Made by a program: the position numbers and the translations under genes. Of a stretch of 64,000 bases of DNA, positions 5,941 through 35,700 are shown one piece after another (position 1 is the first letter of the stretch; each line of letters starts with the position of its first letter). The notes beneath the pieces are model-generated. The model was not told the DNA's origin. It did not search any database and saw only the letters and a list, made by a program, of their open reading frames with translations. Origin of the DNA: Lytechinus pictus (Eukaryota). The stretch covers positions 20,956,001 to 21,020,000 of the forward strand of contig NC_087248.1 in the NCBI RefSeq assembly GCF_037042905.1, in the 5' to 3' direction.

Positions 5941-5944
5941 GATT

Positions 5945-8045: not shown

Positions 8046-8576
8046 TGTTGAAGTAGAATCATCGACTGTGTTGACCTGACATCGACCAGGCTGCAATTGA
8101 ACACTTTGCTGTTAACGACATTGTCCTACAAATTTAGTTAGGCAAATAACGTCTAAGTACTAAACAAGTATAAGACCAGCTTTCCCCTCCACTACCCAGA
8201 CAACCAACTTGCCTTGGAGAAGACAAAGTTCGTCCTCTAGGTAGTGAAATGGTAAGCAGTTCTTGTAAATGTTCATCGCTCTTTCGTTCTCTGCTTCACG
8301 TAACTTGCAGGCCAATGTCATTGACATTAAAACAGTCAACTGTAGCCGGGATGAAATGATATTTGTTCAAGTCAACCAAATCGAAAACACCATGATGCAA
8401 GAGGTTTGCTTGATGTTTTAGCAACAGTGTTTAGGATGGACTGACGTTCGTCCATTCGTAAGGGGTATCCATACGTGTCGTTAGACTGAAAGATGGTATC
8501 ATATCTTACAACGATGTAAATGAAATCCTAATTCAAGAGTGCCTATACCCATCGGGATGATGAAAAAACAATACTT

Positions 8577-9680
8577 GACCCTGAGACATTCCCTCGTTAG
8601 GCAACTATTAATCCATCTTCATGAGCTCATAGGTACTCTCGCACGTTGACTGGTCAACATCGACGAAATGTCGACATCCAAAGTAAGTGGAGCTTTGACC
8701 AGGAGTCAAAACAGCTCCACCGTCGACTGCCCTGAGGTCAACGCAAATACGTCTACCCAAGGGCAGTTGGCAGTTGAGTTGTTCTCACACCTGGCCAGAG
8801 CTCCACCTACTTTGTGTGTCGACATTGCGTCGAGGTTGACCAGTCAACGTGCGAGAGTACATATGAGCTCATGAAATTGGATAAAGTAGTTTTCTACTAA
8901 AGGAAAGCTCCGGGTTTATAACTGATGGTGTGTCCTCTATTAGGATGGTTTACCAAATGAGGCTAGACTGACATGTGGCCCATTATGAAATGCCTAATGC
9001 GAACCGAGATCGTCGATTCCGATGAGAGAACCACAAGCACCGTTGGACCGATAGACAGTATTTCATCCTGTGATGATGCATTTAGGAACCCGAGTCAAGG
9101 ATGATTCTTGAGTGGTAAACAGTAAGAGCATTAGCAGTGTACTCGGAAACATTCCCAGAGTTGACAAACTATCAGTCTACTTTCATGAGATCATAGGAAT
9201 GCAAAACTTGCATGTCGAGTTGTCACCATCAACACTATATCAGTTCGCAAAATAGGTCAAGCATGGCCCATCCATGAGAACTGCTCAGCTGCTGACTGCT
9301 TTAGAGGATTACTCCAAAGGCAGTCAACAACTAAGCAGTTCTTATGCATAGAACTCATCCTGCCCATTCTGTGAGCTGGTATTGTGTGTAAAGATGACAA
9401 CTCGACATACAAACTAAGCATCACATTAGACTCATGAAGGTAAACTGATGGGGTACCATCCCGAGGAATGCATCAGAATAAACTGATGGTGCTCCCACTA
9501 TTCTCCGCTTAGAGTCATCCTTGACTCGCGTTCCTGTGTTCACCCAAATGATGAAATACTATCTGTTAGTCATACGATACATGTGGGTCTCTCATCAGAA
9601 TTTGCGAACTAAGTTCCCCTTGGGCGTTTCAATTGTTGGCAAATCATCAATCTGGCCTCATCCGGCAACCCTTCCTATGA
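8577..9680. repeat. Two adjacent imperfect palindromes (centres ~8746 and ~9310)
   Basis: Arm pairs such as 8619-8630/8863-8874, 9085-9104/9515-9534 and 8959-8968/9651-9660. Confidence 0.8.
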
Positions 9681-12210
9681 TGATAAAGTTTAAGGGTAAG
9701 GTGATGGGATGCTTTATCCCATGTGGTTGGGACGATGGTTTACCCATTGCGACAATGCTTAAGTTGGACTTGATGTTAGTCCTTCCAACAAGATTCCCAC
9801 GCACACTACAGGACTGACAGGTGATATTTCGTCCTATGGCAGTGTGTATGAGACCCCGGTTCAAAGGTCATTCATCTTAGGGGGTGGGCAGGAGGAGAGA
9901 TTGTACTCTTTCATCACACCTGATTGAAAGATGGGCCTCGAGCGAGGAAGGAATGGCTGAAAACAGACACCACCGATACAAACACACATCTTTCACACCA
10001 CTCGAACTGAGAAGGCGTTTCCCAGTTCCCTCCAGGTAACGTCAAGAACGACTCCTGTAAATGGGGGAGATGAGCTCAGTGACAGGATAGAGAGTTGCGT
10101 GAACAAGGCGACAGAGTGACTGATGGTAACTGGGTGATCTGGACCCCTCCGCCCTCCAGTATGTACAGCACTTCTTGATACATGTGACGTAGTCTTTCCT
10201 TGTCTACTGTATATGAATATGTCCTCTGCAGCAAGGGCTGCCATGGACACTAGGTGCACTTTGAAAACGAGAAGATGACATTCTGTGTCAATGATGCCTG
10301 GTGAAGAATGTGTGCTGCTTGCTGAATGTACGGAAGAAATCCACCTTTAAAACATGGTGTTAAGTGCTTTGTAATGAAGGGTATAAGGATTAATGGAGTA
10401 GGTGATTAATCAAAGGTTTTGGCACCCAAAGCTTGCATCCAACCCCCTCTCATTAAGGAGAAAGGAATACTGACAGACAAGATAAAGCTCCAAGTTCCAA
10501 TGTCCTTTTAGACCTACCTGTTCAAAGGAGTGTAATGAAATTAAAAATATTTACATGTAAAATTAAAGGTACAGTTGCATCAACGAAACAGGTTCTAAAC
10601 TGACCAATCGTGAGTCGTCGGAAGTAACTTAATAGCTTTGGTCTGTCAGGGGTTGGTCTCGTTGGTGTGACTACAGCATCATAAGGGTGTTGCCACATAG
10701 AAACACGAGCGATGATTCCCCTACATCTAAAACAATGTATTAAAAAAGAGGATAAGGGGGGATACAGGATGCAGTGATGTGAAACTATAAAACTTCCCTT
10801 TGTGGTGGGGGAACATTTAGTTTACCCCCTCCCCTTCATGAAAAGCGCACTGATGCTGCCACTGAATGACAAAGGAATCATGCAAGCCAGAATTCCATTT
10901 ACCCCACAACCCATATCGCCTCTAACTAATGTTTCCCTGTTGGCTTTCCTGGCTATGCCCCCTCCCATCCCCCCCCCCCAAAAAAAAAAAAAAAACGGGA
11001 AATGGTGTATCAAAATAATTCAGTATAAATGTAAAGATTCTATAATTTCCTTGAAATGGACCTCATATCAAAACATACCAAACGATGGTATATAAGAAGA
11101 TTACTTCACTTGCGAGAGAATTTCAAGCATGAATAAAATGTTGCTTTCTAATCTTTAAAATAGTCGTGTTATAATGTGCCATTGAAGTAACAATGCTTAA
11201 AAATATTCCATCCATCTCCGTAAACTTTTTTTGATCATCGTCAAATGTTGCTCGAACAGTCTTTTTTCCGAGTAAATGCATTCGTATAAATTAAATATTT
11301 TTTATCATATTGGTTGTGTAATAATCTTTTGTCTTGCAGGTCAGGAATTACAATGTCTAAATAGGGCCTCTACCAAGAGTAGGCCTATTGATAGAATAAG
11401 GACAAATATAGTTACTGGATGAATGATCAATAATAAACTGTGTTGTTTCCATCAAAGTGACAGTTGTTGCAAGACAGCATTAAGTCTAACGTGGAATCTG
11501 CTACATTATCATATTTTATGAGAGCATCCTCCCCTTCTGTATGGTACTAAAATACGGATCAATGCCCATCCTCTTCCTGTCGGGAGCGTTGGAAATAACC
11601 TCCCAAGAATATCTGCTATCGGTGGCCACTGCAGGTTACCACGCGCAGTCAGGAATATAATGTCAAAAGGCCAGGTCAAGACATAATGTAGTGTAGATCA
11701 TCCATGAGTATTTGGACCAAGAACCCCTCGCCTATTACCATGTTTCAGAAGCCTAAGTTGCCCCTCGTCATCAACGCACATCATTGCCACAACCCTAAGC
11801 TGATTTTACTGATACTGATGCTTCTAAGACGATCTTGCCATCATCAATTGGATGGAAATAATGTAAGATACGCGGGCAAAATAAGTTATATCAAATAAAC
11901 TTTTTCTGCCAGCAAAGTGTTGATAATCAGGCTATGTTTAGTATTCATTCTGTGAGTTGATGTCCGAAGTTTAAATGCGACTTAAGCCGTTTGGGAAACA
12001 ATTTCCATGATTACTTGTGATCTTCAGTTGTCACTCTTGAGCGTGGCATCCCTAATTACCTGATAAGAAGCTATCACGTTAAGAGCTACCAGTGCCACCA
12101 TGTGTAGTCGGTGTAGAATTTCTTCACTTTACTGTCAAGTCTATAATCTTAATTATTGTCGCCCTTCTCCTTTTCTTCTTCTTCTCTTCTTCTTTTTCTT
12201 TTTCTTTTCC

Positions 12211-12828
12211 TTCTTACTTACTTACTGCCCGTTATGCCTCCTGGAAAGTAGGGCAGCAACAAAAGCTCTCCACTCCCGTCTGTCTTGGGCCAGTCTCTGC
12301 ATTGATCCCCAGGTCTGTCGGAGGTTAGACATTACGCCCTCCACGGTCCGTCTCAAGGTGTTCTTGGGTCGACCTTGTTTTCTCCTTCCTTCGGGGGTCC
12401 AATGCAGTGCTGTCCTTGTAATGTCATCCGCTTCTTTTCTTAATACATGTCCGATCCATCTCCACCTCCTTTTCATAAGTATGTCTTCCATACTCTCTTG
12501 TTGGCATCTTTCATTTAGTTCTTCATTTGTTATTGTGTTAGGCGAGAATATACGATGTATACGCCTTAAACTTTGTGTATGGAAGCCTGATAGTCTCTGG
12601 AGGTCATGTCTTCTCATCCTCCACCATTCTGAACCATATAAAAGTGTTGAAAGAACGCAGCTCTGGTATATGTTAAGCTTGGTCTTTACTCTATATTGTT
12701 GCGACCTCCATACGGTGATAAGCATACTAAATGCAGGCTTTGTTGAGTCAGTTTATAATGTCTTTCCCTGCCCCTCCGCCATAGCTAACATTGCTACCAA
12801 GGTATGTAAAATCTTCAGTAAATGGTAG
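12211..12828 (-). mobile_element. RTE-clade LINE 3' fragment (degenerate)
   Basis: FTYLGS motif, then LLYGSE.W, RRWRWIGHVLR, GRRKQGRPK, AQDRREWR; (TAAG)n 3' tail; stop and frameshift near 12740. Confidence 0.9.
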
Positions 12829-12859
12829 TGAATTTGAAACATTTAGGGTCATTACTTGT

Positions 12860-13485
12860 CTTTTTTTTTGGTTCAATTTTTTTCCCTTCTACTCTTTCTT
12901 CCATATTCCTCTTCTTGTTCTTCTTTTTGTTCTTCTTTTCTTCTTCTCTTTCTTATTTTCGATTGATGTTTATTCCCTTCTTGGATCTTATCCTCTCCAT
13001 ATTATCATTGAAGTTATTTGTTCTCATCCTCCTTATTCTTCTTTATTCTCCTTGGTTTTTCTCCCTTTTAATTATCTTCTTGTCCATCGACCTTAATTTT
13101 CTCCCTTTTCTTCCATTTCCTTATCTTCTTCCTATTTTTCTTCCTCTTTGCCGCCTTCTACTTTGCTATTGTTATGATTTTTGTTTTCGTCAAAGTCTTC
13201 AATTTCATGTTTAACCTTTTCCCCCTCTATTTCAACTTCACTGCCTTAATATTCTCCTTTTTTTATGGCTCTCATTCATTTTCTACTGCGGTATTTTCCT
13301 TCTTCCCCTTCCTCTTTTCCCGGGTCTTTTTCTAATTGTTTTCATCCTTTCCTTTCCCTTTTCTTCTTGTTCCTTTTTCTTCATTCTTTATTTTTTTCTT
13401 TCTCTCTTTATTCTTCTTCTTGTTGTTGTTGTTCTTCTTCTGCTTCTTTTTCTTCTTCTTTTAGTTCTTTTACTTCTTCTTAATC
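12860..13485. repeat. Polypyrimidine (CT-rich) low-complexity tract
   Basis: TTC/TTTC-rich; the F/L/S-rich ORFs here are compositional artefacts. Confidence 0.85.
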
Positions 13486-14670
13486 TCCAAATCCTATACG
13501 TTTTTTTTATGCTTGTTCGGTTTGTCTCATTGTCCTTGTCTTTCTATTGTACCTGTACTGTCTGAAAATCACTCGATAAACATGATAAAGGGTGGTGATC
13601 AACTGCCACTCTGATGGAAGCAAATGTTCAAGTTATAGATTACTTGATTATTGATTTTGGATCCTACTTCTGAAATAACAATTCCATTGGACTTGATCAT
13701 TCCTTCATTGCAAGACTAACAACGCAAAATGAAATCCGTAAATTTAATCCACAGATTCCCAGCTATTATAGTACAAAATGCAAATGTGGAAAAAGAATTG
13801 TCAAGTGCAAGTTCCTCGATCTTCCTTACTGTGTAGACCTTGGATGAGTCTGGAAAAGATTCATATGCAAGGAAAGAGAGTAATCGTTAATGTGAGAAGT
13901 TATTAGTGAAATTGAGAATATGAAAATTAGTAGATGAGATAGGTGAAGGTGATAGGTGAGGAGAATATAAAAGAAGATATGAAAAGTAGGAAGCGGGATT
14001 AAATGCAAGTTGCACAGGATACCATGCCTTCAAAACGTCATCGACTTCAAAAACCCAAGTGCCATCCGTCACAAAATGATAAAAGACACCATCTTGTTCT
14101 AAAGATCGACTTCCACAGCACATCTGCAAGCAACAGACACCCCCACCCGACATCATTGCCACAGAAAACACCTTCTCACTTTCAAAGCACACCCTATGTC
14201 TATGACAGTCCGCACTGCAGAGGGCATGTTCATATACGACAGACAAGAAAAGACACCATCACTTGCATCAAGAAATGCCGTTCACACTGGAAGACATCAG
14301 GACCTAGATCACCCAGTCATCACCAGTCACCATGTCACCAAGCCATGCAACACCCTACCAGGCCACTATCACCCATCTCCTCCATCTACAAGAGACATCC
14401 CTGACGTAACCTGGAAGGAACTGAGAAACACCAACCCAGTCCTGTAGCAGGAAAGATGCGTGCGTGTACCATTGGAATCTGCATCCACCCATTCTTTCCT
14501 CACTCTGGACCCATCTCTCAATCAGATGGATTTAAGAGTGCAATCTGCCCAACTGCCCCTCCCCTAAGATGGATGTCGCCTTTAAACCTTTGATGGAAAG
14601 CATTCGTAATGGTGTCCCTCTCCTTCATTAAAAAGGCCACAATCACCCTATCCCGTCCCCTTCCCATGTA

Positions 14671-14881
14671 CACTCTAAAAAACTCCCAGTTCAGATTATA
14701 CCCAAAATGATTCCGTTGGGCCACGCTCTGTACCGGGTCAAAAATAACTCAGAATAAGATCCGATGTGACCATTTCTGGGCCACATTAGAACTTAGTCCG
14801 GTCATTTTTCACCCGAAACGGAGTGTCCACTCAACATACTGATTTTGGGTATATCTGAACGGGGATTTTTTTTTTTGAGTG
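14671..14881. mobile_element. CACTA-like MITE
   Basis: CACTCTAAAAAACTCCC ... GGGATTTTTTTTTTTGAGTG. Confidence 0.5.
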
Positions 14882-14994
14882 TACATGGGAAGGGGAATTG
14901 CTTAAGAAGACACGAAGCTGGTCGGTCTCCTATTAAGGGAAAGACTTTGGTCAAAAGTCGGGCTTGTCCCCCCCCCCCCCCCCCCGAACTACTC

Positions 14995-15870
14995 CCATGA
15001 GCCACAATCGCCCCATAGAGCCGCTATCGCTTCCAAGCGCTGCTATTGCTCCCAATAGCCGGTATCGTCCCCAAGAGCTACTATCGCCCCCAAGAGCTGT
15101 TATCTCTCCCAAGAGCTGCTATTACTCCCAACTGCCAGAGAGCCGCTACCGCACCCAAGAATCGCTATTCCTCCCATGAAGCCGCTATTGCTGCCAAGAG
15201 CCTCTATATCACTCCCAAGAGCTGCTATTGCTCCCAATAGCCGGTATCGCCCCCAAGAGCTGCTATTTGCTCCCATAACAGCCAAAATCGCCCACAAGAG
15301 CCGGTACCGCCCCCAAGAGCTGTTATCGCTCCCAAGAGCTGCTATAGCTCCCAAGAGCTGATATTGCTGGGAAGAGCTGCTGTCGCTGCGGAAAGCCGCT
15401 ACTGCTCCCATGACGCAGCTATTGCTCCCGAGAGCCGCAATTGCTCCAAAGAGTCACTTTTGCTCCCAAGAGCTGCTATTGCTCCCAAGAGCCGCTTGTG
15501 CTCCCAAGAGACACTATTGCTCCCAAAAGCCGCTATTGCTCCCAAAAGCCGCTATTAGTCCCAAGAGCTGTTATTGCTCCCCAAAAGCCGCTATTGCTCC
15601 CAAAAACTGCTATTGCTCACAAGAGCTGCTATTGCTCCCAAAAGCCGCTTTTGCTCCCAAGAGGCGCTATTGCTCCCAAGACCCGCTATCACTCCCGAGA
15701 GCAGCAATTGCTCCCAAGAGCCACTATTGCTCCCAATTGCTGCTATTGCTCCCAAGAGCCGCTATCGCTCCCAAAAGTCACTAACGATTTGTAGAGCCGC
15801 TTTGCACTCAAAATCTGCTAATGCTCCAAAGAGCTGCTATTATCCCTAACTGCTGCTATTGCTCAAAATA
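14995..15870. repeat. 19-bp minisatellite, ~45 copies
   Basis: Consensus GCTATTGCTCCCAAGAGC(C/T). Confidence 0.92.
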
Positions 15871-17397
15871 CTAGCTTGTTTTTTCCCATTTTGGTATTTT
15901 GTTTCTTTATGGCTATTTTAGTATTATTTTGTTTATGTTTTTTTTTAGAAATCCTCGGTTGATTGTTCAATTTTTTCACTGATTTGTGGTCTTGTTGATT
16001 TAGATTAGGGATGAATCAGACTAGCAATTCGATACATTTGGTATTCGGTAATTTTCAAATTTTCAAATAATATGTAAGGAAAATAATGAGAAGAATGTTT
16101 CAAAACATAGCCCTTCTAATACCCCCCCCCCCCATCCCCTGAATCCATCCATTACTAAAAATGTCCAACTTTTCCTCGAGCTTTTATATTCTCTTATGCT
16201 ACAAGTAATCTAAAGAAAGGTTTCATTCGGCTAAATCATTCTCAATAAAGATCATCAATGAACTGGATAATGGGCTAATCAATCAGTCTTTCAGGTCAAT
16301 CACCCTCTCCCAACATTCCACCATTGAACTGAACAAATTGTCCAATACGACTGTGGGGCGAATTGTTTTCCAAAGTTTCTATTTCTTAAGTTCTTAGGTT
16401 TGAGTCTTGTGTTGACATTCCCTCCCGAATCCCTCAGTATAATTCTCTTATTGGATGGAAAACCTCTCTGTTGCGTTATTATTTTTTTAAATCTTAAACA
16501 TTGTTGTTACTTATTCCAGATAATTCTAATAATGGAGTGATGTAGATTTTATTTAGGTTGACGGGTCTCGAAAGATGGTACCAAAAGTTGTGAATTCACG
16601 CCTTAACCAAAATGACTCAGTGTAACATGATTTAACAGATGTGGACAACACCAATACTTGAAACAGAGACAAACACAAAACAAGAAAAAAGAAAGAGAAA
16701 AGATCATGAAACATTAAAGACAGGAAACAAACAGTACGGCACGAATAATCCACCTTGGATGATGTCAATAAGATGTCAAACGTCATGTGACATTGACACT
16801 TGACCCTTTTTCTTTAGACCAGTTCAAGTTGTGTGAGACTGATCTTGCCAATGGTATTTAATTGACACGGAGATTGTTATCGACTCTGGTAGCTTATGCT
16901 TACTGTAAAAAAATATTATTATTATTATAATCTTAGGAGACTCAAGATGAAATAGAAATGAGTCTAGATTTTCCTTACAGGGTATTTTGATATTTCAGTA
17001 AATAGGACTTGGTGTCCTTGTTGAAAGCCTGGAGGCACAGCAAGGAATTGTGTTTAATAATCCTTCTTATGCACTTTGTTAGACAAAGTCCAAATAATAG
17101 ATCTAACAAGGAATCATAACTTTAATCTTTGATCCTCTATGATCAACAGACGGATACCCTCCAAATAATTTACAGAATTTATACTGCGGGGTTTGGTTTA
17201 CTTTGAGAAGGGTTTAGTAGGTAGATCAACCTCAACTTGAAGATTAAAAAAATCTTAAGATTTGTTTGGCCGAGATTTGTTTTTCTAGAAGAAAATTATC
17301 CAAAAACAGTGAATAGAAAGAGGAAATGAAAGATCCAACTTCATAAGTTTAGAAAACAGTGAAACCAAAAGTTTTGAATTAGTAGATTCTAATGACT

Positions 17398-17726
17398 TTA
17401 AACAAACCGTGATCGGGAATATCTTTGGGCACTTATTTCTTCGGGTATTTCCTCCTGGTCACTGCTCGAGGTACAGGAAGGTGCTCGAAATGTGACGCCT
17501 GGTGATGACTCATGGTTGAGGGTCTGCTCAGTTGCAGATTGGTCGTTGGCCTCGACGACTTCGGTCTGTTCTGGCTCGATAACCTCGAGCACTTCTTCCC
17601 TGGTTGTTCTAAGAACGATATCCCAACCTTCTGTGAGCTGGGTACGCTTATGAAGCACAAGAACAGAGTGAGGTCGTGCAGGAGGAATAGGCTTCATTTC
17701 TCCAGTCTGATTGACAGTCTCATCTT
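17398..17726 (-). CDS. Uncharacterised gene exon 4 (terminal coding exon)
   Basis: taacag|DETVNQTGEMKPIPPARP...RYSRSRFV*; phase 1 start. Confidence 0.8.
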
Positions 17727-20700
17727 CTGTTAAAAACAAATAGTGGAGGAGAAAAAAAAATGCAGTAATACAGTATATGTCACTTTATTTTTCATCATGA
17801 GTTATCATTATTCGGAGATGCAAATAAACGACAGAGGCCTTAAAGCTCGCTATGTGTAGACAGGCTAGGGTTTCTAAAAACTGGCTTGCCAATTACTATT
17901 TCTATTGTATGGAATAAAAACATGAAAAAAAAATTGGGGGTGAATATAAAATATGCTGATAATCGCACATTCCTGTTCCATATCTTTTTCTCCCTCTCCT
18001 ACAATCTATATATCTCTGTCTCTCAAGTTTTATGTCTATTATTTTGTTTCGTCGTGGTTATTAATACTATATCATTTCATTAAACATAAGTTTGAAAATA
18101 AATCTACGAATGAAAGTTTTTTGGGGGTGAGTGACAAGCACTTGTGACGCCTTACGCCCATGCTCATTTACCTGAAGGTTTTGTTGTTTCAGTAATTTTT
18201 GCGTTGCTCTTTTTCATAAATTTGCGTGAATTATCTCCACGATTCCCACCATGGCTTGAAGGCGGAAGAGGTTCCAGGCGATTCCCGGCCTGCCTTGGTT
18301 GTGGTTGATGAACCCTATGATTCCCGCCTCGGTTGGATGATGGGGGGAGTGGTTCTAAATTTCCTCCCCGCATTGATGGTGCTTGGCGTGGTAGGCCCAC
18401 CCCAAGATTCCGGCCTGGAAGCGATGGTGGCTGCAGTGGTTCCCGATGGATTCTGCCTTGTATCGGTTGTGGTGCGCGTGGCGCACCATGATTTCCGCCT
18501 CGCATCGTTGGAGGTGGGCGTGGCAACCCCTCAATTCCGCCTTGTCTCGGTTGTGGTGGGTGTGGAAGCCTTTGAATCCCGCCTTGCCTTGTTGCCATCC
18601 TCCCTGGGGGCACGTCCATTGAAATCAAGCCTGGTCTTGGCGGAGGAGCTAGGGGATCCACCTTCAGAAAATTAGTAAAGATTAAGATAGATATCTTTCA
18701 TTTCATCTTCAGATTATTCCATAAAACAACCAAAATGCTGTTCCTCTAATCAAAAAATGATGTCAACGCTTTCAGCTGCCGTCTTCTTTAAATGAATGTT
18801 TCGAAGTTTAAAATCAAAATAATGGAAAGGTTTTGAAGTAATCACATAATTTGAGGTATGTATGTAGGTATCAACATTACAACGGGGATAATCAATGTAT
18901 CCCATGGTTTCCTATTACCGTTCAAATTCCCACTGATTCCCAAATTAACCAATTAATATTCATTGCGGCATAATGGGACAAATTTGCCTGCCATTTTTTC
19001 AACCCTGATTGAGCTGGATGCCTCTTTTTTTTTCATTTCGGGTTCTAGTATACTGTATTTTACATTTACAAGACAATTTATTTGCTTAGAAATATATATT
19101 TTAATCATTTTATTTATGTATAAAAATTATGATATATCTGATGGGTGAATTTGAACTTACGCCCCCATTGATTCTTCTCTTGGCCAGGGAATTGCTACGT
19201 GCTCGTGTGTTTCTCGCCGCCGTCGGTGGGCGTGGTCCAGGTGGAGGTCGTGGGTTTGAAGGAAATTGTAGAGGAGTGACGGTGGTTTCGGTGCCATCTG
19301 ACGTAGGAGTGGCCTGAACGTCATTATCTGGTGGGGTTTGTACTTGAGCAACTAGAGGCGTTGGCGTGATGGGCGGGAGCGATGGTTGAGACTCTGCTAT
19401 CAGTGCCTCCAGTTGCCGATCAAGATAATCTGCATCTGGAAAGGGGGGAGCCAAGAAAATCAAATGTTTTACATATTTTTCTCCTTATGATCTGTAAGCA
19501 CAATCACAAATCCTTTTTCAAGTTAGCTGTGTTTGGTATTTGTTCTAATTGCGCAAAGAAGACACATTTTAATTACTTTCATGTTGTCTTGATTTTTATT
19601 TTGTCTGACAAAGATGCATTTTGTAATGTCCTCATTAGAAGATGATGCATATACAATGCAGGGGCCGCGGAACCGGGAGGGGGGGCTGGGGGGGGGGGGG
19701 GCTTCACCCCCCCACTTTTTTCCAAAACCGTGTACAAAAACGTAAAAATGACCATATGATTGTGATTTTTAGCATGATCAGCCCCCCCCCCCAACTTTTG
19801 GCTCAGCCCCCCCCCCCACTTTGAAAGCCGTTCCGCGGCCCCTGCTAATGTGGTTTGAAGGACATGGAGTTGGGGCCACACTACAAAAACTGTGGTGTTG
19901 ATTTAACACCAGCTCGGATTCTATATATGTCCACACCAGAGAAGTGTTAAACAATAGGTGTTTATAAAACACCAATTGGTATTAAAACAGCATCGGTTTG
20001 ATTCCAAATTGGTATTGTTTCAATACTTCTCTGGTGTGGACATAATAGATTCCGGGCTGGTGTTAAATCAACACCGGAATTTTTGCAGTGCAATTGGGGT
20101 CAATTTCATCAGCCCCCACGCAGTATGCACATCAAAAATTGGAAGACGACAAATTACACAAAAAAAGTATATGCGTCAGATAATTAAACATTTGATTCAT
20201 GTAAAAAAATTATAATACGTGAAAAGAGAATAATACGTTTACAGATGTTCACCCTGACTCAACAATACTATCATCATATTTACAAATTAGCAATAGTTAA
20301 TGTATATATTCGAAGTCTTTTTACCTCAACAATACTGTGTAGAATGTTAGTTTATTTTATTATTTGCTGTATTTTGATACTATATGCGTACAAACAAGGC
20401 CCATTTTATACCAATAGTGATTATGGAAAGGCTAAAGCCTTTACCCCTGTATAAAGAAGGCTGAATAAAATGAGTAGATATATCAAAAATAAAGAAATCA
20501 TATCAATACAAGAATGGTATTGAAATAAGTATTGATAATGACGTTCAAATTGTTGAAAAAATATTAAGATATAAACACAGCCATTGTAATTTTTCAAAAT
20601 AAATTATAGTTTTCAATGATAATTATGTGACCAAAAATCAAACAAATTTATAAAATTAATCCGATTAAATTATTTGATACGTTATCAATGAAATTAATTG

Positions 20701-23700
20701 TGAATTTCTTAGTTTGAAAATCGATCTATAAGATTTGTTTCGGGGAAAATTAGATATTAGATTATGAAAAGGTTAAATTCAAAAACCTAAGATTTTTAAT
20801 CTAATTTAAGACAGGTTTCTTATAGCATTGAAAAAATATGTAAAGAAGGGAAGTGGTAAAAGTTGATGAAAAAATAAATTTTTGATTTTATAGAACATAT
20901 AACGCTAAATAACAGTATATTGATTAAAATCATATTTAGTATTGGCTTTATAACATGTGGGACTAATTCGTGGGAATACTTAAAACCTAAATGAATAACT
21001 CAAGGAAATACAAAAAGTATCATAATAATGAACCCCAAAAAAATCGTAGCCCGAATTTATGCCAATATAATGAATTCGCATTAAAAGTTTGGCCAAATCA
21101 TTTGTAATAGGTCCATGGCCAAATTAACAAAGATGAATTTGTTAAAGGGGGATAATGTTCAAAGCCCAATTACTTAAAGGAGAATGAAACTCTTGGAGCA
21201 AGTTAGCTTTTGTGAAAGCAGAAAAATCAAAGAGTAACATCAACAAAATTTTGAGTAAAATAGGACTAGCAATAGAAGAGTTATGAGCATTTGAATGTCG
21301 AGATCACTAATGCTATGGAGATCCTCCCATTGGCAATGCGGCCAAGATCTATGATGTCACAGAATGAGATGAACAACTCTCCCCTTTTGGACACTGAAAA
21401 TATACCCCAAAACATCTCTTTTTGCTCATTCGAATCATATGACAAACGATTCATCAATGATATAATGTTGTGAAACCTTTGTACTTGTCCTCTCATAAAG
21501 AGAACACCTCACATTGTGATAGACTCTATAAAAGTGACTAAAGTAATGAGGGAGTTGTACGTGTGTGACATCACAGTTCTTGGTCGCATTGCCAATGGAA
21601 GGATCTACATGGCATTAGTGATCTCAATATTCAAATGCTCATAACTTTCTTATTATTCATTCAATCTTCCTCAAACTTTCAACAATATGTTTCTTTGATT
21701 TTTCTCTTTGATATGGATTCAGCTGGTTTCAAGGGTTTCATTCTCCTTTAAAATAGTTGGCAATAATTTATTGGTTAAAGGGGAAGTTCACACTGACAAA
21801 GAGTTTATTGTAAAAAATAACAGAAAACAATTATTAAAACATATTGGCGAAGGTTTGAGGGAAATCGCTCAAAGATTACATATAATAGAATTTTAATTAT
21901 TTGATTTTTGACGTCATATGCGAGCTGTTCCCCTACATATCGTATGGTATAACAAATAAATGAACTGTCATTTCCTCAGAAATATAAAAATTATTATTGT
22001 TGTACCTTAAGTATATAAAAACACAAATAATTTCACACCCGCTTCTAAAAAGAATATCAAAAATAAGTCATCACGAACCATTAAAAAAATGAAAGTTGTG
22101 CATTAACATATGGGGCCCGGCAGCTGCTCGTTTATGGAGTCATAAATCAAAAACTTGAAATTCTAATAACTTTCTTAATTGTTAATGAATTTCCCTCAAA
22201 CCTTCACCAATATTTTTCATTATTTTTTCTGCGTGCTATTTTTACGACAAAGTTTTCGTCAGAATGAACTTCCCTTTAAATTCGCTGGTTGACACTATAC
22301 CACCAAGCAGGGTCAATTTGACTGTTTTCTATGATAGACACTGTAACTTTCATGAAGCAGCATACTGCTTAAAAAAATCATTTGAATAAGTTATAAGTAG
22401 TTGACTGTTTTTTTTTCAGTTTGAAGGGCTTGTGCAAGAGAAAAACTAAGACAAAAGAGCTTTGGTAAAAAAAAACTTTTATTTTTTTTTCTTTCAAATT
22501 CCAGCCCTTTAGTGAAATGCACGTCGTCATGAATACTCATTAGTTGAGCTGATGATGTCACATTCCCACTTTCATTTTTCTTATGTTAGTACGCCCGGTG
22601 AAATCATAATTGTTTCATTTTTCATACATGTACATGTGTGAATGATATATCTCCATTATAATAAAATAAATTGCAGCAATGAATATTTAATGCACTTAAT
22701 TAGTTGTCAATTAAATTTTTTTTAGTTCTTGATAGAAAAATTTGAATAAATCTTATTTCATATAACAAAATACAAAAGAACAAGTTGGGATATGACATCA
22801 TCAGTTTGCTCATTGAATATTCATGAAGACATGACTGGATCTGTTTCCCCGGAATAATGCAAATTTTTAAAATGCCATAGCCATGTTATTCCATGTCTGA
22901 TTTTGATCAAATTTTCAGTATTTTGTTTGATATTTCTTTGTTCAAATCATTATTTTCAGCCTGGAGTATCCTTTAATGGTGACCCTGCACACAGGTTATG
23001 CAGCGGCTGTAGCCCCCCCCCCCCCCACATCTGTATTACCACCACTTACACTATGATATTTCTTGCCACAGTTTGGTGACTTTGGTCAAACAGATATAAT
23101 AATTCCATTTGAAGTTTATCATCAATAATTTTTTTGTTCGATCTATTTTAAGGTGTTTGCAGATGTCTACTTGGATTTTTCTTTAATTAAACTTATATAA
23201 TTCCACTTCTTGAAAAAAAGAGAAGTATATTCTGAAGAAAGTAAAACAAAAATAATAATCAGCTTTAATGATGGCCCTGCACACAGGGGACAATGGGGGG
23301 GGGGGGCTAGAATAAAGTTGATATCTTTTTTTTTTCTCATATCTATTACTAAGGTATCAAAATTACACGATCAATATATTTCTCCGTTTAACAATATCTC
23401 TCTTCCCTTTCCCCCTCCTTTTCTTTTTTTAAATATTTTTTTTCAGGTGTGGTCGCCCCACTCCAAGCCCCGTATGGCCACCACTTATGGATTAAAATTT
23501 CTTGCCACATATTGGTCAAATAAGTTGATAGAATAATGATCCAATTCAAGGGGGCACATTTTCCCCGAGATAAAATTTGACAAGCAATTATACACACACC
23601 CTCACACACACACAAAAAAGGTATTCAACACAAAAATAAGTACAGTTCGTCAACGAGAAAATTTGCCAAGGCCCTTGCTTTCAAGGGGGTGGGGGGCACA

Positions 23701-24113
23701 GTCGTGTTTTAACGACATTTTTACATTACAAATTAAAATTGTGCCTCTCAATGGGGGGGGGGGGGGCACGAGCCGGCTGTGCCCCCCCCCCCCCCCGTGG
23801 ATCCGCCAGTGATTCAATTTGAAGATTATCAATAATTACACGAAATATTATCGTCAGTTCGCACATCTCCACCGTGTTTTTTTCGTCATGGTAAAAAAAA
23901 ATCGTATAAACTCAATTCTTGAAAAAATTTATAAAAAATTAATCAAGATTTCTTACACATCATTCTCTCAATGCGCCTTGCATTGGCACGTAACTCCTCA
24001 ATATCTTCATCGGGGTGTACTTTGATGGGTGATGATGGTCTAACGTTAGGGATGTATCCCTTAACTCGAGGTAGTTCTCGCATTTTCCCTGATTTTTTCT
24101 GATTTCCTGACAT
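17398..24113 (-). CDS. Uncharacterised 416-aa Pro/Arg/Gly-rich, largely disordered protein; 4 exons (24113-23957, 19435-19161, 18661-18172, 17726-17398)
   Basis: GC-rich open islands bounded by GT-AG sites; phases 1, 0, 1 join into a 1251-nt ORF from aaaATG (24113) to TAA (17400-17398). I recognise no family. Confidence 0.75.
18172..18661 (-). CDS. Uncharacterised gene exon 3 (RGG/Pro repeat exon)
   Basis: tactaat branch-like site and ctgaag|VDPLAPPPRPG...TTKPS|gtaaat, phase 0-1. Confidence 0.82.
19161..19435 (-). CDS. Uncharacterised gene exon 2
   Basis: ttccag|ADYLDRQLEALIAESQPSLPP...PRPPPGPRPP...RARSNSLAKRRINGG|gtaagt, phase 1-0. Confidence 0.8.
19659..19844. mobile_element. MITE with CAGGGGCCGCGGAAC TIRs (copy 2)
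   Basis: Same TIRs and internal sequence as 588-755. Confidence 0.85.
19879..20090. mobile_element. CACTA-like MITE
   Basis: CACTACAAAAA ... TTTTTGCAGTG ends with internal AACACC/GGTGTT palindromes. Confidence 0.65.
21178..21747. mobile_element. TTAA-flanked MITE (Kolobok-like AGG...CCT ends)
   Basis: TTAA|AGGAGAATGAAAC ... GTTTCATTCTCCT|TTAA; long internal inverted symmetry. Confidence 0.8.
21779..22275. mobile_element. TTAA-flanked MITE (Kolobok-like)
   Basis: TTAA|AGGGGAAGTTCA ... TGAACTTCCCT|TTAA. Confidence 0.8.
22500..22972. mobile_element. Truncated copy of the 37106-37611 MITE family
   Basis: Shares the ATGAATA(T/C)TCATTAG..GCTGATGATGTCACA core; right end CAGCCTGGA...CCT|TTAA. Confidence 0.65.
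23957..24113 (-). CDS. Uncharacterised gene exon 1
   Basis: MSGNQKKSGKMRELPRVKGYIPNVRPSSPIKVHPDEDIEELRANARRIERMM; donor GTAAGA, phase 1; too short for the ORF track. Confidence 0.65.
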
Positions 24114-26589
24114 TTTACTTTGATGGACGTTTGAGTTTTCACTCCCTTCTTTCTCGTTAATAAGACCACTTTAATGTAATGTTGTGAATATTCTGTTGAT
24201 AGGGTATAAAGTGCGCGCTGAGCCATGACGAAACAATCATTCAGGTAGCATGATGCAATGCGCGAAATTCATTAGCGAGCGCATTTGATTGTGACGTAAA
24301 CGCCAATTGGAACGATGACATATACCCTCTTCTATATCAGAGCCCGTAGGGCGGGGAGGAGGGGGGGGGGGCTTTATAGATGAAGCTGAAAGTCCAATTA
24401 CCCTATTCTTTCGTCCTTCATCTAAGTTTGATATTTTCCACATCCGGGATATTTTCCCCACCAACAAGGGTGACACTACATCACATGGGTGGGGGGGGGG
24501 GCAATTCTCGACCCCATTTTTCATTTTCAATTATCTGAATTTTTTTTTAAATGGTGATAACAAAGGAGGCCGGAAAGAGGGGGAATATGGAAGAAATAAA
24601 CAAGAAGAACATATTGATACATTGGCATGGTATATGTCAATGTATGAATTTTAAGTGATCTAGTGAGCAATCAAAGTAGCGTTAAAATGTAAATTTGTAT
24701 ATAGAAATCGTTGGTATCCCGTGTTGACTGCTAATCATTCTCTCTTATCTCACTTTTGATAACGTGGTATTTTGTTTGTTTTCAAATTTACTTTAGGGCC
24801 TATATAATTCCTATGTAAATTTATGTTCTGATAAGGCTACATTCACAAACTTGATTTAAATCGTCAAAGTGGATTATCAAATGAGCATAATTTGCATAGA
24901 TACCAATACAATACAATATTAGGTTTGCATATACCTTTTGTGTCTGTACACGTTGTTTATTACTATATCTTGTTTATTACTTGCCTATTATTACTATTAT
25001 TGCTATGATACTGTTTTTATTTCTTACCACCAAAATGGTGATGTGCATGCCACCATGTAGTTAGAAAAAATAAATAAATGAATGAAAAATTATTTTGCTT
25101 TCTAGCAAGTTTTAGAAAGTGTGTCCCATACGCCATACGCTTCTGCCTTTGTATCCGCGTCTTACCATTCCCGCCTCTTAAGAATATGCGGTCTATTAAT
25201 TTATTATCATTATTATTTTTTGATGTTGGGAAGATAGCTAGGATCAGGGGCGAATCCAGGATTTTTCGAAAGGGAGGGGCACATTTTCCCGAGGAAAAAT
25301 TTACAAGCAAAAAAAAGGGACTTCACTTTCAAGGGGGGCACATTTTTGTTTAACGGCATTATTATATTACAAATTTTGATTGTGCCTCTCAAAGAAGGGG
25401 GCACGGGCTGGCTAAGCCCCCCCCCCTTGGATCCGCAGTGGCTAGGATATCTTAATAGGGGGAGGAAGAGATCATGAAGGTGTAAAGCCTAATTCCATGA
25501 CAAAATTATTGAATGACGTCGGGGGCAGATCTAGCTTTTTTTCCAAAAAGGGGGTTAAACCGAGGAATTTGACAAGCAAAAAAGGGGCTTCATTTACATA
25601 ACGAAGGTCATTTCAGTATCCAGAAATTTGACCCCCAAAAAAGGTTTCACTTTATAATAAATCAGCTAATTTGGGGGTGACTCCAAAATGTAGCAAAATG
25701 TAGGTCATTACTTGACTTGGCAGCCCCCAACGGGGTAGTTAAATCCCCCCATAGATCCGCCACTGTTGCCATACTTGTAGCGCGCTATTGAACTTCATGA
25801 ACTGAATCCCGATCTTCCACATATTCCTGATTTTTTTTTTCGAGAAAGAAAAATTGGGCACTTATTTAAATTGTAACGTGCATTATGGAGTTGTGACATT
25901 ACTTTTACATCGGTTTTCCCCTTATCTGTCTTGTCAGTTTTGCTTAGTTTGCTGTCCGAACTATTTCTTATACCAGATATTAAGTAAACGAAATTAATTT
26001 TTCGTTACTCAGTTCTCTTTTGTGCTGACTCTCATCCCTGAGTGCGAAAAAAAATACGAATGAGCATAATAACTTCGTGTCTACCATTTTACCTAGCTTC
26101 TTCTCCCTTTTTCTTTTTCTTTCACCTTTCAACCCCCCCCCCCCTTCATTTCCTTCTTCTTTGGTCTCCTCTCCTCATGGCAGAGTACAATTAGTTTTGC
26201 CGAGCGCATGTGCGCGGACAGAAAAAGAAATTAAAAAAAATAGTTATGTATGAATTGTCTAGTCATATATTTTGCATATGATTGCAGTAAATAAATGTAT
26301 ATACAATTAATTTGTATGATTGGGAGTGGGAGTCCGCGGACACCTTTTAAAATTTTGAAGCCTTCTTTTTTGTCTTGGATTACAATAGACTATGGATTGA
26401 ATAGTTGAAATCATATTCTATTTTGTTCTCTATGTATATTGTCTAACCCTTTTAATAAAAGCTGATGAAACTTTATTTGTAATTTTTTTCCGAGTGGCTG
26501 TTTATTTTATGATTGACTGTCCCGAAGTCCGGACGCTCATTCCCGTTTGCTATGTCGCCCGCCCTCATCGGTCATGAGACTCACAGTGT

Positions 26590-26688: not shown

Positions 26689-26775
26689 ATGTCCAAGAAG
26701 AGAGCTAAGAGTGGAGCAGGCTCAGCAGGTGCCGCCCGATGGGAATCTGGTCTTTTATCAACCAACTTTGAAGAG
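26689..26775 (+). CDS. SPAG17: SPAG17 coding exon 1
   Basis: ATG 26689; [29 protein letters not shown]; donor GTAAGA, phase 0. Confidence 0.9.
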
Positions 26776-32700: not shown

Positions 32701-35700
32701 AACGTTTGAAATCACAATTAAAAAGCTATGACTGGGCTTCGATTAGTGCTCTGTTAGCATTAACAATGTTTCTGTCCCGCCGGTACAGCTCTATAATAGC
32801 TGGATTTATAAAACATTTTCCCAGATGGTACAAAGCACAATTGTTAATACCTCGTCTTGAGCTCAAGCTGCCGCCTCATTAGCAGCACTCGGGGCATTCA
32901 AGGAATTAATACTACCGGGTACCCCATTCACCTCACCTGGGTCGAGTGCAGCACAATGTGGGTAAATTTCTTGTTGAAGGATAACACACCATGGCTGGGA
33001 TTTAAACCCATGTCCCTCCATTAGGAAGACAAGATTCAGAACCACAACATCATTTGCTGTGGTTGATTCACGATTGGAAGCTTTATGAAATTAGTCTGGT
33101 ATCATTTTCATTGTCAAAAGCAGAAGAACAGTTGATTCTCCTCCTTAGTCTCTGCTGTCCAAGTTGAGGTACATGTCAGAATCTGAATCAACAATAGCCA
33201 TTAATTTTTGTATAACGTTTCACAGTTTTTGTAGCATAAATCAATCTTGAAACTTCTAAAGCTACATTAAATTTCATAGTCTATGCTATAGACAATGATG
33301 GTCGATCACCCTGACAATAACAAGACCAAAGAATAGGAAGTTGGCCTCATAGCTTTTCTTTAAAAATGTTTTCCACTCAATTCTTTTTACATAGATGATG
33401 AGCCAGATGATGGCCCGCAGCATTACGTCATCATTGAGGGTTTCGATCAGGCCCCCCTCCTCTCTCTGCTCACCGACCTTGGCATCAACGTCAACTGCAT
33501 CATCCGTCTCCAAGCAGAGGACTACTCCTTGTTTGAGAAGAGGCGCAGGGAGGAGGAGGAGGAGATGGATGAGGATGATAGACCTCCAGAAGGTAAGTTG
33601 GTTGTCGGGATTGATGGTGGTGGTGNNNNNNNNNNNNNNNNNNNNNNNNNNNNNNNNNNNNNNNNNNNNNNNNNNNNNNNNNNNNNNNNNNNNNNNNNNN
33701 NNNNNNNNNNNNNNNNNNNNNNNNNNNNNNNNNNNNNNNNNNNNNNNNNNNNNNNNNNCTAATGATGGTAATGATGATGATGACAAAGAGGAGGGTTAAT
33801 GGCAATTGTGATTGTCATAATGATGTTGATGTAATAAATGCCTACTGTTATTAAGATTACAAAAAAATATATATAGTATCGGTATATCTATTAATACTCA
33901 AATTCAATTCAATTCCATTTTACAATAGCTCTGATATTGGCTGTTAAGAAAGATAACATTTTCACGGTAGTTTCTACTTGTTTGTAAAATCAAAACCCCC
34001 TTTACCATCCCCCTTCTTCCTATATCCAGTCATCGAGGAGGAGAAGAAGAAAAGGGAAGCCGCCAAGGAAAAGCTTGAGAAGTTTTGGCTTCAGCACGAA
34101 CCACTCCTGAAGAAAGCTTCCAAGAGCTCCAAGCTCCAGGACATTGCCCGCCTCACCTACACGGTGAAGAATCAGATCATTCCCGATGACATGAAGGATA
34201 ATGAAAAGAGAGTGAGTAGCATTGAATCTTAAAGCTTATTGCATAAAAAGCTGCATTTAATTGCAGCTCAAGTAATCAATTGCTTGTTTCTTACTACGCA
34301 TATGTCATTGGTTGAAAGCCAAGTTGCATTTAATATTTTGAAGTTGCATTTGATCACAGCTCTTTCTGCAACTGGCACCGCGACAATTGCTTTCCAGTGG
34401 TTCTGACTTGCTTGAGGGTCATCTGTTCAAATCCCACCACAGTGATAGTGTTCTTCGACGTCAGTTGACGCTAAGCCGCTATCCATCCAGGTGTTAAATG
34501 GGTACCTGATAGGATGCGAAAGCCAGTATAGTATGCTTACGGATTTTAATTTTGGTAGCTTTTGTTGATGTGCTCCACATGGAATGGATAAAAGGTATTG
34601 TGTGGGGCAAGTCAGAATTTGATGACCTGGATAAATTTATATCTGCAAGGCACTTAGAGACATTGTCATGTTTTAAGTCCTTCATAAGCGCAGAATAGTG
34701 TTATGATCATTAATAGTTCTACAACATAAAGTATTAAGCGACCTCTGTCTGAGATTAATGAATTAGGAAACCATTCCTGTGAAATTTATTTCTTTTTAAC
34801 AATGTCTTCTGCCTTGAAGGTTATGATTGATAATTATCATAAATATTTGTTTGTGTTTGGCCGTGATCAAATAATGGTGAAATAAAAGGATCCCCCCACC
34901 TCTCTCTCTGATCCTCCCTTCCCCTCTTTACTCTACAGACCCAGTTTGGTACAGACATGTTTGAGGATGTAGCCTGCATGATGTACGATCTCCTGGACTC
35001 AGAGAGGCAGTACAGGAATTTCCTAGACAACATGAAACTCATCCAGGTCCCTGTCGTAGAGAAAGATCCTCAAGGTATGCAAAGTGGTGAAAGGTCGACT
35101 TATGCAGATTTTACTGTACTATTAGTTCCATAAAGTGCTTCCTGTGTCTGTTCATACCAGCATCTGCAAGTTGACGTTGTCTAATCCCCTTGTATTCCTT
35201 ATTGTACTCTCAATCTACCCTACAGCTACTGACAGTCAATCCACGGTCCCTGCCGGGGGCACAGCAGCGCAGCAGCCAGCAGGCGGCCAAGCAGTCCCCA
35301 CCGACCCTGCTGCTGCCCCGGAGCTCAAGCCCATCGTAGTCTCTGCAGACGTGGATACCCGCTACTACAATGAACTCATGGATAGCATTCCTCAAGAGAG
35401 TGTCAGCGTACCTCTTATCATGCACTGCATGCTTGATCAGGTAAGGGAAGACAATTCTTCAAGGTATGGGCAGATCTAGGATTGAACAGGGGCCTATTTC
35501 ATAAACTATTACTCAGTTGAAACAAATTCTTTTGCAATCATTGCTTAGCATTGTGTTACAGGGACTAGAACTATATAAATTATTTTAAAGCTTAGTCCCT
35601 GTAGTTGCAGCAATCGAAGTTTTCATGAGATAGTATTATAAATCAAGGTTAATTGTCATTATATAATTGTAGATCAAGATCTTCTTCCTTTACAGAAACC

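What the first reader, a model, noticed from the sequence alone, without database searches (positions are those of the whole stretch)
17398..24113. Unassigned 4-exon gene for a disordered Pro/RGG-repeat protein, head-to-head with SPAG17
Four exons splice in frame to 416 aa; exon 1 is missed by the ORF track. Architecture: basic N-terminus; a putative helix across the exon1/2 junction (EELRANARRIERMMYADYLDRQLEALIAE); Pro/Thr linker with PRPPPGPRPP and an RxRxxS site (RARSNS); RGG/Pro repeats; acidic C-terminus. I recognise no homologue, so it is a candidate lineage-restricted gene. Its ATG is only ~2.6 kb from the SPAG17 ATG, so shared regulation and a sperm or cilia role are plausible (inference).
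Basis: partly seen in the sequence, partly recalled or inferred. Interest (0 to 1): 0.7.

Follow-up and report, generated by a model that had tools for sequence, protein, structure and literature searches.

The report
Lytechinus-only disordered proline-rich protein gene
The four-exon gene is real and under selection, but it is a sea-urchin (Lytechinus) gene of unknown function that RefSeq already models under misleading names, and nothing ties it to its neighbour SPAG17.

Summary
Observation confirmed. Four minus-strand exons with canonical GT-AG sites splice to 1251 nt, giving 416 aa. The window is from Lytechinus pictus.

The gene is not unassigned. RefSeq holds automatic models: XP_063954054.1 "actin-binding protein WASF1-like" (301 aa, a donor inside exon 3) and the older XP_054753650.1 "inverted formin-2-like" (407 aa). 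Both names come from proline-rich similarity only; no WH2, FH2 or any Pfam domain passes.

No RNA run was listed, so splicing is unverified. Comparative evidence is strong:
- L. pictus has an intact paralogue 1.13 Mb away, and L. variegatus has two intact copies.
- All share the splice sites, and all six indels are in frame.
- dN/dS is 0.22-0.33.

The only homologues found are in Lytechinus. AlphaFold2 gives mean pLDDT 43 and one helix across the exon 1/2 junction. Exon 3 holds eight 14-aa Gly/Pro repeats with three isolated RGG, which is not an RGG box.

SPAG17's likely ATG is 2576 nt away. However, the duplicated unit ends 190 nt upstream of this gene's ATG and excludes SPAG17, so co-regulation is unsupported. 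Function is unknown. My best guess is a phospho-regulated, disordered proline-motif adaptor.

The parts
24114..24303 (-). Conserved proximal block (5' UTR plus probable core promoter). It is the upstream limit of the duplicated unit.
   Evidence: About 80% identical among LpA, LpB and both L. variegatus copies. Homology stops here.
24292..24299 (+). CRE/ATF-like octamer TGACGTAA (TTTACGTCAC on the gene strand), invariant in all four copies
   Evidence: The motif occurs 12 times in the window, so only its invariance is notable. Function is inferred.
23957..24113 (-). Exon 1 CDS (M1 to the first base of codon 53), donor GTAAGA
   Evidence: The first ten codons (MSGNQKKSGK) are kept in all four copies. 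RefSeq models start at M11.
19436..23956 (-). Intron 1 (4521 nt)
   Evidence: Its length varies from 2587 to 5782 nt among copies.
19161..19435 (-). Exon 2: end of the helix, Pro/Thr linker, PRPPPGPRPP, RARSNS
   Evidence: It is the most constrained segment, dN/dS 0.04-0.18.
18172..18661 (-). Exon 3: eight repeats of about 14 aa rich in Gly and Pro (about 18251-18583), then a basic KFMKKSNAK stretch
18485..18487 (-). Internal alternative donor (G|GT) used by the 301-aa RefSeq model XP_063954054.1
   Evidence: The P0002 sequence joins RGGNH to EDETV. The GT is present in LpA, LpB and LvM but lost in LvP.
17398..17726 (-). Exon 4 CDS: conserved GWD[IV]VLRTT[RK]EE motif, acidic tail, invariant C-terminus EEIPEEISAQRYSRSRFV, stop TAA
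17096..17397 (-). Probable 3' UTR with ATTAAA at 17121-17126
   Evidence: The high-identity A/B block ends at 17096. It is 93% identical to the L. variegatus orthologue. Sequence was read. The poly(A) site is inferred.
26689..26775 (+). Context: putative first coding exon of SPAG17 (29 codons, donor GTAAGA)
   Evidence: Sequence read. SPAG17 identity was shown only for a downstream exon at 35135-35476. The exon-1 assignment is inferred (one search gave no hit).

Best explanation
This is a genuine protein-coding gene of Lytechinus pictus. It is one of two intact paralogues (A here; B at C4:19.836-19.841 Mb) that arose by an inverted segmental duplication before L. pictus and L. variegatus split. 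Both species have kept both copies under purifying selection. Gene conversion still homogenises exons 3-4 within L. pictus.

Shown: the product is a hydrophilic 416-aa protein with no signal peptide, almost entirely disordered. It has a basic N-terminus, one helix of about 32 residues, and a strongly constrained Pro/Thr linker with PxTP, PPGPR and RxRxxS motifs. Eight 14-aa Gly/Pro repeats follow, then an acidic C-terminal region with two conserved linear motifs. It has no detectable relatives outside the genus.

Inferred: it works as an intracellular scaffold or adaptor built from short linear motifs. Its proline motifs would recruit SH3/GYF/EVH1-type modules, under control of proline-directed and basophilic kinases. 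It would be transcribed from its own compact promoter, the conserved 190-nt block with a CRE-like site, rather than from a promoter shared with SPAG17.
For: Gene structure:
- Canonical splice sites and a single open frame.
- Paralogue B has identical exon boundaries and is an intact 415 aa, 93% identical.
- L. variegatus has two intact copies of 424 and 420 aa.

Selection and history:
- dN/dS is 0.22-0.33 in all six pairs, Fisher p 8e-6 to 1e-12. The linker gives 0.04-0.18.
- All six indels are multiples of three.
- Introns show A is orthologous to LvM and B to LvP. Orthologous introns are 74-87% identical (three of four at 85-87%) against 51-78% for all other pairs. LpA/LpB exons 3-4 are 95-98% alike.

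No relatives and no fold:
- Independent RefSeq models of the same junctions exist.
- Only Lytechinus hits.
- No Pfam, PDB or Atlas relative.
- AlphaFold2 mean pLDDT 43, with a helix at residues 37-68 (pLDDT 71-79).
- GRAVY is -0.96 and the maximum 19-residue hydropathy is 0.54, so no signal peptide or membrane segment.

Motifs and promoter:
- Motif inventory.
- The duplication boundary lies at window 24303 and the proximal block is conserved.
Against: There is no transcript evidence. No RNA run was listed, and no transcript-derived protein fragments turned up.

The adaptor mechanism rests on short motifs that occur often by chance in proline-rich sequence. No partner was tested. The homodimer job for the helix gave no answer. 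The helix is clearly amphipathic only in its N-terminal half.

'Genus-restricted' rests on protein libraries. Other echinoid genomes could not be searched by tblastn.

dN/dS near 0.3 is relaxed constraint, and gene conversion complicates the paralogue comparisons.
Confidence: 0.6

Rival explanations
1. One reading: a sperm or cilia gene co-regulated with SPAG17 from a shared bidirectional promoter.
For: The two genes are head-to-head, with ATGs 2576 nt apart. SPAG17 identity is confirmed downstream. No expression data contradict the idea.
Against: - The A/B duplication stops 190 nt upstream of the ATG and excludes SPAG17. Paralogue B is still intact and constrained. The only ORF of 80 aa or more seen upstream of it is a GPCR-like one about 11 kb away.
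- In the L. variegatus assembly neither copy has SPAG17 within about 9 kb upstream. The two copies face each other, though across a 500-N gap.
- No strict X-box (RFX) motif occurs anywhere in the window.
- 2.6 kb is longer than the usual gap of under 1 kb that defines bidirectional promoters (my own knowledge).
Confidence: 0.12
2. A diverged member of a known actin-regulator or proline-rich family, as the RefSeq names suggest (WASF1/WAVE, inverted formin INF2, proline-rich protein 2).
For: The automatic names were given by NCBI. Proline-rich tracts such as PRPPPGPRPP resemble FH1 and WAVE proline-rich regions.
Against: No WH2, WAVE homology, FH2 or any other Pfam domain appears at E<=1. The only exception is a sub-threshold FAZ1_cons match (14.8-18.7 bits against a 27.5 cut-off), which is absent from two family members. 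There is no PDB sequence match. The three names disagree with one another.
Confidence: 0.03
3. Not a functional protein-coding gene: a decaying duplicate, or an ORF kept intact only by recent gene conversion.
For: No transcript evidence could be obtained. Decayed exon-3/4-like copies with stops and frameshifts exist on C7. Gene conversion between A and B is evident.
Against: Four copies in two species all keep the frame, the start, the stop and every splice site. dN/dS is significantly below 1 for orthologous pairs too, and six of six indels are in frame. Gnomon models exist in three annotations.
Confidence: 0.08
4. An RGG-box RNA-binding or phase-separating protein.
For: The protein is rich in Arg, Gly and Pro, is disordered, and has three RGG tripeptides.
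Against: There is no di- or tri-RGG arrangement, because the RGGs are at least 13 residues apart. There is no RRM, KH or other RNA-binding domain. The repeats are dominated by Pro, which is atypical of RGG boxes.
Confidence: 0.07

Closest known systems
RefSeq Gnomon models of the same family: XP_063954054.1 and XP_054753650.1 (L. pictus), 'proline-rich protein 2-like' (L. variegatus, P0004), LOC129259397 (paralogue B, P0006)
   Same: They cover the same locus or family and use the same three exon junctions. P0002 is identical to the window outside the skipped part of exon 3.
   Different: The models start at M11 rather than the conserved M1. The current model uses a weak internal donor that removes 105 aa of repeats. 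The P0006 model of paralogue B departs from the family sequence through its middle third. The names (WASF1-like, INF2-like, PRP2-like) are not backed by any domain.
Proline-rich regions of WAVE/WASF and formin FH1 domains
   Same: Disordered PxxP and poly-Pro tracts that could bind SH3 or profilin-type modules (motifs; the comparison is from my own knowledge).
   Different: There is no WHD, WH2/VCA or FH2 domain. The proline tracts are short and sit inside 14-aa Gly-Gly repeats.
C-terminal PPPGMRPP-type tails of Sm B/B' that bind the CD2BP2 GYF domain (from my own knowledge; a lead, not a test)
   Same: One invariant PPGPR (PPGx[R/K]) motif inside PRPPPGPRPP, next to Arg/Gly-rich sequence.
   Different: There is no Sm fold, only one such motif, and no evidence of GYF binding.
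Taxonomically restricted ('orphan') genes that encode disordered proteins
   Same: No homologue outside a narrow clade, low complexity, relaxed but real purifying selection, and copy-number turnover with pseudogenes.
   Different: The gene has four exons and conserved introns, and was already duplicated before the species split, so it is not a very young de novo ORF. Its origin is unknown.

Membership tests
WASF1/WAVE | N-terminal WAVE homology domain and C-terminal WH2 plus acidic (VCA) module | tested here: not met
   A Pfam scan of the exons and of P0001, P0002, P0004 and P0005 at E<=1 found no WH2 or WAVE-related family.
Inverted formin INF2 | FH2 domain (with DID/DAD) | tested here: not met
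   No FH2 or any formin family in Pfam, and no PDB sequence match.
RGG-box proteins | Clustered RGG repeats (di- or tri-RGG with spacers of 0-4 residues; definition from my own knowledge of Thandapani et al. 2013) | tested here: not met
   The regular-expression search found three RGG at residues 198, 242 and 255 and no di-RGG.
FAZ1 conserved domain (PF23398) | Score at or above Pfam's gathering cut-off (27.5 bits) | tested here: not met
   Scores were 14.8-18.7 bits. The match is absent in P0004 and P0005.
Bidirectional gene pair with SPAG17 | Divergent TSSs less than about 1 kb apart, an arrangement conserved across copies and species, and correlated expression | tested here: inconclusive
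   The ATGs are 2576 nt apart and the TSSs are unknown. The arrangement is not kept by paralogue B, nor, as assembled, by the L. variegatus copies. Expression could not be tested.
Taxonomically restricted protein-coding gene | No homologue outside the clade | tested here: met
   An exhaustive phmmer search with exon 4 against 1.8 billion representatives found only self plus one spurious hit. Word-indexed searches of the whole protein and of residues 1-140 found only Lytechinus. Other echinoid genomes were not searchable.
Taxonomically restricted protein-coding gene | Evidence that the ORF is maintained by selection | tested here: met
   dN/dS is 0.22-0.33 with p<=8e-6, six of six indels are in frame, and all four copies are intact.
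Taxonomically restricted protein-coding gene | Transcription and splicing | not testable with these tools
   No RNA run was listed, so read laying could not be used. No transcript-derived fragments were found.

The most novel reading that the evidence does not exclude
A gene family born or radically remodelled within the Lytechinus/toxopneustid lineage. It would be kept as an inverted (possibly palindromic) pair with ongoing gene conversion. Copy A would have been captured next to SPAG17 and would act in sperm or cilia as a disordered, phospho-regulated docking protein.
Probability: 0.08. Interest if true: 0.5.

Novelty: new member of a known kind. Interest (0 to 1): 0.25.

Why it matters
- **Annotation.** Three RefSeq names (WASF1-like, inverted formin-2-like, proline-rich protein 2-like) are unsupported and would mislead enrichment analyses. 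The conserved start is M1, and the 416-aa form, not the 301-aa model, is the one conserved in all copies.
- **Evolution.** This is a tidy case of a lineage-restricted, disordered protein kept under selection as a duplicated pair, with gene conversion and a decayed array elsewhere in the genome.
- **Testability.** L. pictus is a genetically tractable urchin, so a knock-out is feasible.
- **Limits.** Nothing here opens a long-standing question, and the link to SPAG17 and cilia has no support.

Tried and rejected
- **RNA evidence.** The look-up of sequencing runs listed no RNA run, so read laying could not be used.
- **Transcript contigs.** The look-up of encoding contigs has no record for P0001 or P0002.
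- **Transcript fragments.** A search with P0002:1-150 for transcript-derived fragments found nothing.
- **Remote homology.** Pfam, PDB sequences and the ESM Atlas by features and by structure (all TM below 0.4) gave nothing usable. P0003 is a repetitive, unrelated protein at 25% identity.
- **Fold search.** No fold search was run on the AlphaFold2 model, because a mean pLDDT of 43 would give meaningless matches.
- **Self-association of the helix.** The complex-prediction job with two copies of P0002:12-75 returned no answer (score 0.01). It counts neither for nor against binding.
- **X-box near SPAG17.** I thought by eye that GTACCCTGGCAAC, about 85 nt upstream of the SPAG17 ATG, was an X-box. 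It fails the strict GTNRCC-N0-3-RGYAAC pattern, and the window has no strict match. My first pattern call was a syntax error.
- **SPAG17 exon 1.** One search was one base out of frame. The corrected and the low-complexity exon gave no SPAG17 hit, so the exon-1 assignment remains an inference.
- **Literature.** Searches for the RefSeq names together with Lytechinus found no paper.
- **Earlier scan notes.** A word search of the scan's notes found nothing.
Full report
**1. The observation**

On the minus strand, the segments 24113-23957, 19435-19161, 18661-18172 and 17726-17398 carry canonical splice signals. The donors are GTAAGA, GTAAGT and GTAAAT. The acceptors are ...TTTCCAG...TTCTGAAG and ...TTTTAACAG. 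They join to 1251 nt, giving 416 aa with one terminal stop. Read-through of each donor meets a stop within 1-18 codons.

**2. Organism and existing annotation**

An exhaustive phmmer search with exon 4 against 1.8 billion representatives returned two proteins that are 100% identical over exon 4. They are XP_054753650.1 "inverted formin-2-like" (407 aa) and XP_063954054.1 "actin-binding protein WASF1-like" (301 aa). Both are from Lytechinus pictus, and the second lies on a contig of exactly the length of the window's contig C4.

Both start at M11. The 301-aa model also uses an internal G|GT donor at 18487, which removes 105 residues of exon 3. The gene is therefore already modelled, not unassigned.

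The names are not supported. No WH2, WAVE-homology, FH2 or other Pfam family is found. The only match is a sub-threshold FAZ1_cons hit (14.8-18.7 bits against a 27.5 cut-off), and two family members lack it. There is no PDB sequence match.

**3. Is it a real gene?**

No RNA run was listed, so junction reads could not be checked. A search aimed at transcript-derived fragments found nothing. I used comparative evidence instead.

- **Paralogue B.** The own genome holds a second complete copy at C4:19835889-19840894 on the plus strand, 1.13 Mb away and inverted. It has identical splice sites and an intact 415-aa ORF, 93% identical.
- **L. variegatus.** The orthologous locus (L028, around the annotated "proline-rich protein 2-like", P0004) contains two intact copies of 424 and 420 aa.
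- **Selection.** Across all six pairs dN/dS is 0.22-0.33, with Fisher p from 8e-6 to 1e-12. The Pro/Thr linker is the most constrained part, at 0.04-0.18.
- **Indels.** All six indel events are multiples of three.
- **Start codon.** The ten codons before M11 are conserved in all four copies, with a single K-to-R change. This favours M1 as the start.
- **Orthology and timing.** Introns show A is orthologous to LvM and B to LvP. Orthologous introns are 74-87% identical (three of four at 85-87%) against 51-78% for all other pairs. The duplication therefore predates the species split.
- **Gene conversion.** Exons 3 and 4 of LpA and LpB are 97.8% and 95.4% alike, against 88-91% for A and 93-94% for B with their orthologues. 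This points to gene conversion within L. pictus.
- **A likely unconverted allele.** An older RefSeq protein (P0005) has A's N-terminus and an LvM-like exon 4 that is absent from this assembly. It is probably an unconverted allele.

I put the chance that this is a functional coding gene at about 0.9.

**4. The protein**

AlphaFold2 was run with only a five-sequence alignment. It gave mean pLDDT 43 and pTM 0.17. The only helix spans residues 27-58 of P0001, which is residues 37-68 of the 416-aa protein.

There is no hydrophobic segment. The maximum 19-residue hydropathy is 0.54 and GRAVY is -0.96, so there is no signal peptide or membrane span. Only the N-terminal half of the helix is clearly amphipathic, with a hydrophobic moment of about 0.55.

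Exon 3 is eight repeats of about 14 aa (GG[IN]xxxLPxPPxPxR/Q), with a 42-nt period visible in the DNA. There are only three RGG tripeptides, at least 13 residues apart, so this is not an RGG box.

Short motifs found:
- one PPGPR
- LPHPP and LPRPP
- several PxxP
- five TP sites in the linker, including PITP
- RARSNS

The C-terminal region keeps two invariant stretches, GWD[IV][IV]LRTT[RK]EE and EEIPEEISAQRYSRSRFV. They are still recognisable in decayed copies on C7.

**5. Distribution**

Three searches found only Lytechinus proteins: the whole protein, residues 1-140, and exon 4 exhaustively. The Atlas gave no usable look-alike. Other echinoid genomes could not be searched at the DNA level. The accurate statement is therefore that no relative exists outside Lytechinus in the protein libraries.

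**6. SPAG17 and regulation**

SPAG17 is confirmed downstream. The ORF at 35135-35476 matches PDB 9ijj chain x, "Sperm-associated antigen 17", at E 2.7e-9, and Chlamydomonas PF6.

A plausible first coding exon lies at 26689-26775. It gives MSKKRAKSG..., followed by donor GTAAGA. It is too short to verify. The ATG-to-ATG distance is 2576 nt.

Homology between A and B runs from beyond window position 5000 up to 24303 and stops there. The two L. variegatus copies also end at that point, facing each other across a 500-N gap.

The shared 190-nt block upstream of the ATG is about 80% conserved. It begins with an invariant TTTACGTCAC, which is CRE/ATF-like. Paralogue B has no SPAG17 next to it, yet it remains intact and constrained. 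No strict X-box occurs in the window.

The simplest reading is a compact promoter of the gene's own. Co-regulation of copy A with SPAG17 is not excluded, but it has no positive support.

**7. Mechanism**

Shown: a hydrophilic, mostly disordered protein with one helix and conserved linear motifs, under purifying selection.

Inferred: an intracellular adaptor built from short linear motifs. Its proline motifs would bind SH3/GYF/EVH1-type modules, and its linker would be regulated by proline-directed and basophilic kinases. I give this specific mechanism about 0.25-0.3. A test of helix self-association returned no answer.

**8. Novelty and verdict**

This is an ordinary kind of object: a lineage-restricted gene for a disordered protein that automatic annotation has already modelled. 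The functional inference from the neighbouring gene is weak.

The useful products are corrected annotation (start codon, isoform, names) and the description of the duplicated, gene-converting pair. Interest 0.25.

Noticed in passing
L021 (G000:C7:33859001-33868900), about 3220-6800: A tandem array of decayed exon-3-like and exon-4-like copies of this family, with stops and frameshifts. No exon 1 or exon 2 equivalents were found. It is probably a pseudogene cluster on another chromosome.
   Followed up: partly
L028 (L. variegatus CM031018.1:64205925-64233681), gap 9266-9765: The two L. variegatus copies lie head-to-head. Both homology blocks end exactly at a 500-N scaffold gap, at the same point where A/B homology ends in L. 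pictus. This is either a true palindrome centre or a scaffolding artefact. In L. pictus the copies are convergent and 1.13 Mb apart.
   Followed up: partly
window 5000-17037, compared with G000:C4:19841422-19852759: The segmental duplication extends at least 12 kb downstream of the gene, at 83-86% identity. It includes two minisatellite-like arrays (window about 5000-8043 and 14990-15868) with strong GC skew.
   Followed up: no
P0005 (older L. pictus RefSeq protein) compared with window 17398-17726: P0005 has A's N-terminus but an exon 4 that is only 83% identical to A. It resembles the L. variegatus orthologue LvM, including a 7-aa insertion. That exon 4 is absent from this assembly, which suggests a polymorphic gene-conversion tract or a missing third copy.
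   Followed up: partly
window 12222-12725 (-): A 167-aa ORF that looks like the C-terminal part of a LINE-type reverse transcriptase. This is from resemblance only and was not searched.
   Followed up: no
L022 670-1671 (+) (G000:C4:19823670-19824671): An intronless 333-aa ORF with the look of a rhodopsin-type GPCR, about 11 kb upstream of paralogue B. It was not searched.
   Followed up: no
window 23650-23832 and 25333-25440: A short repeated element flanked by poly-C and poly-G runs occurs both in intron 1 and in the spacer towards SPAG17, at about 75% identity.
   Followed up: no
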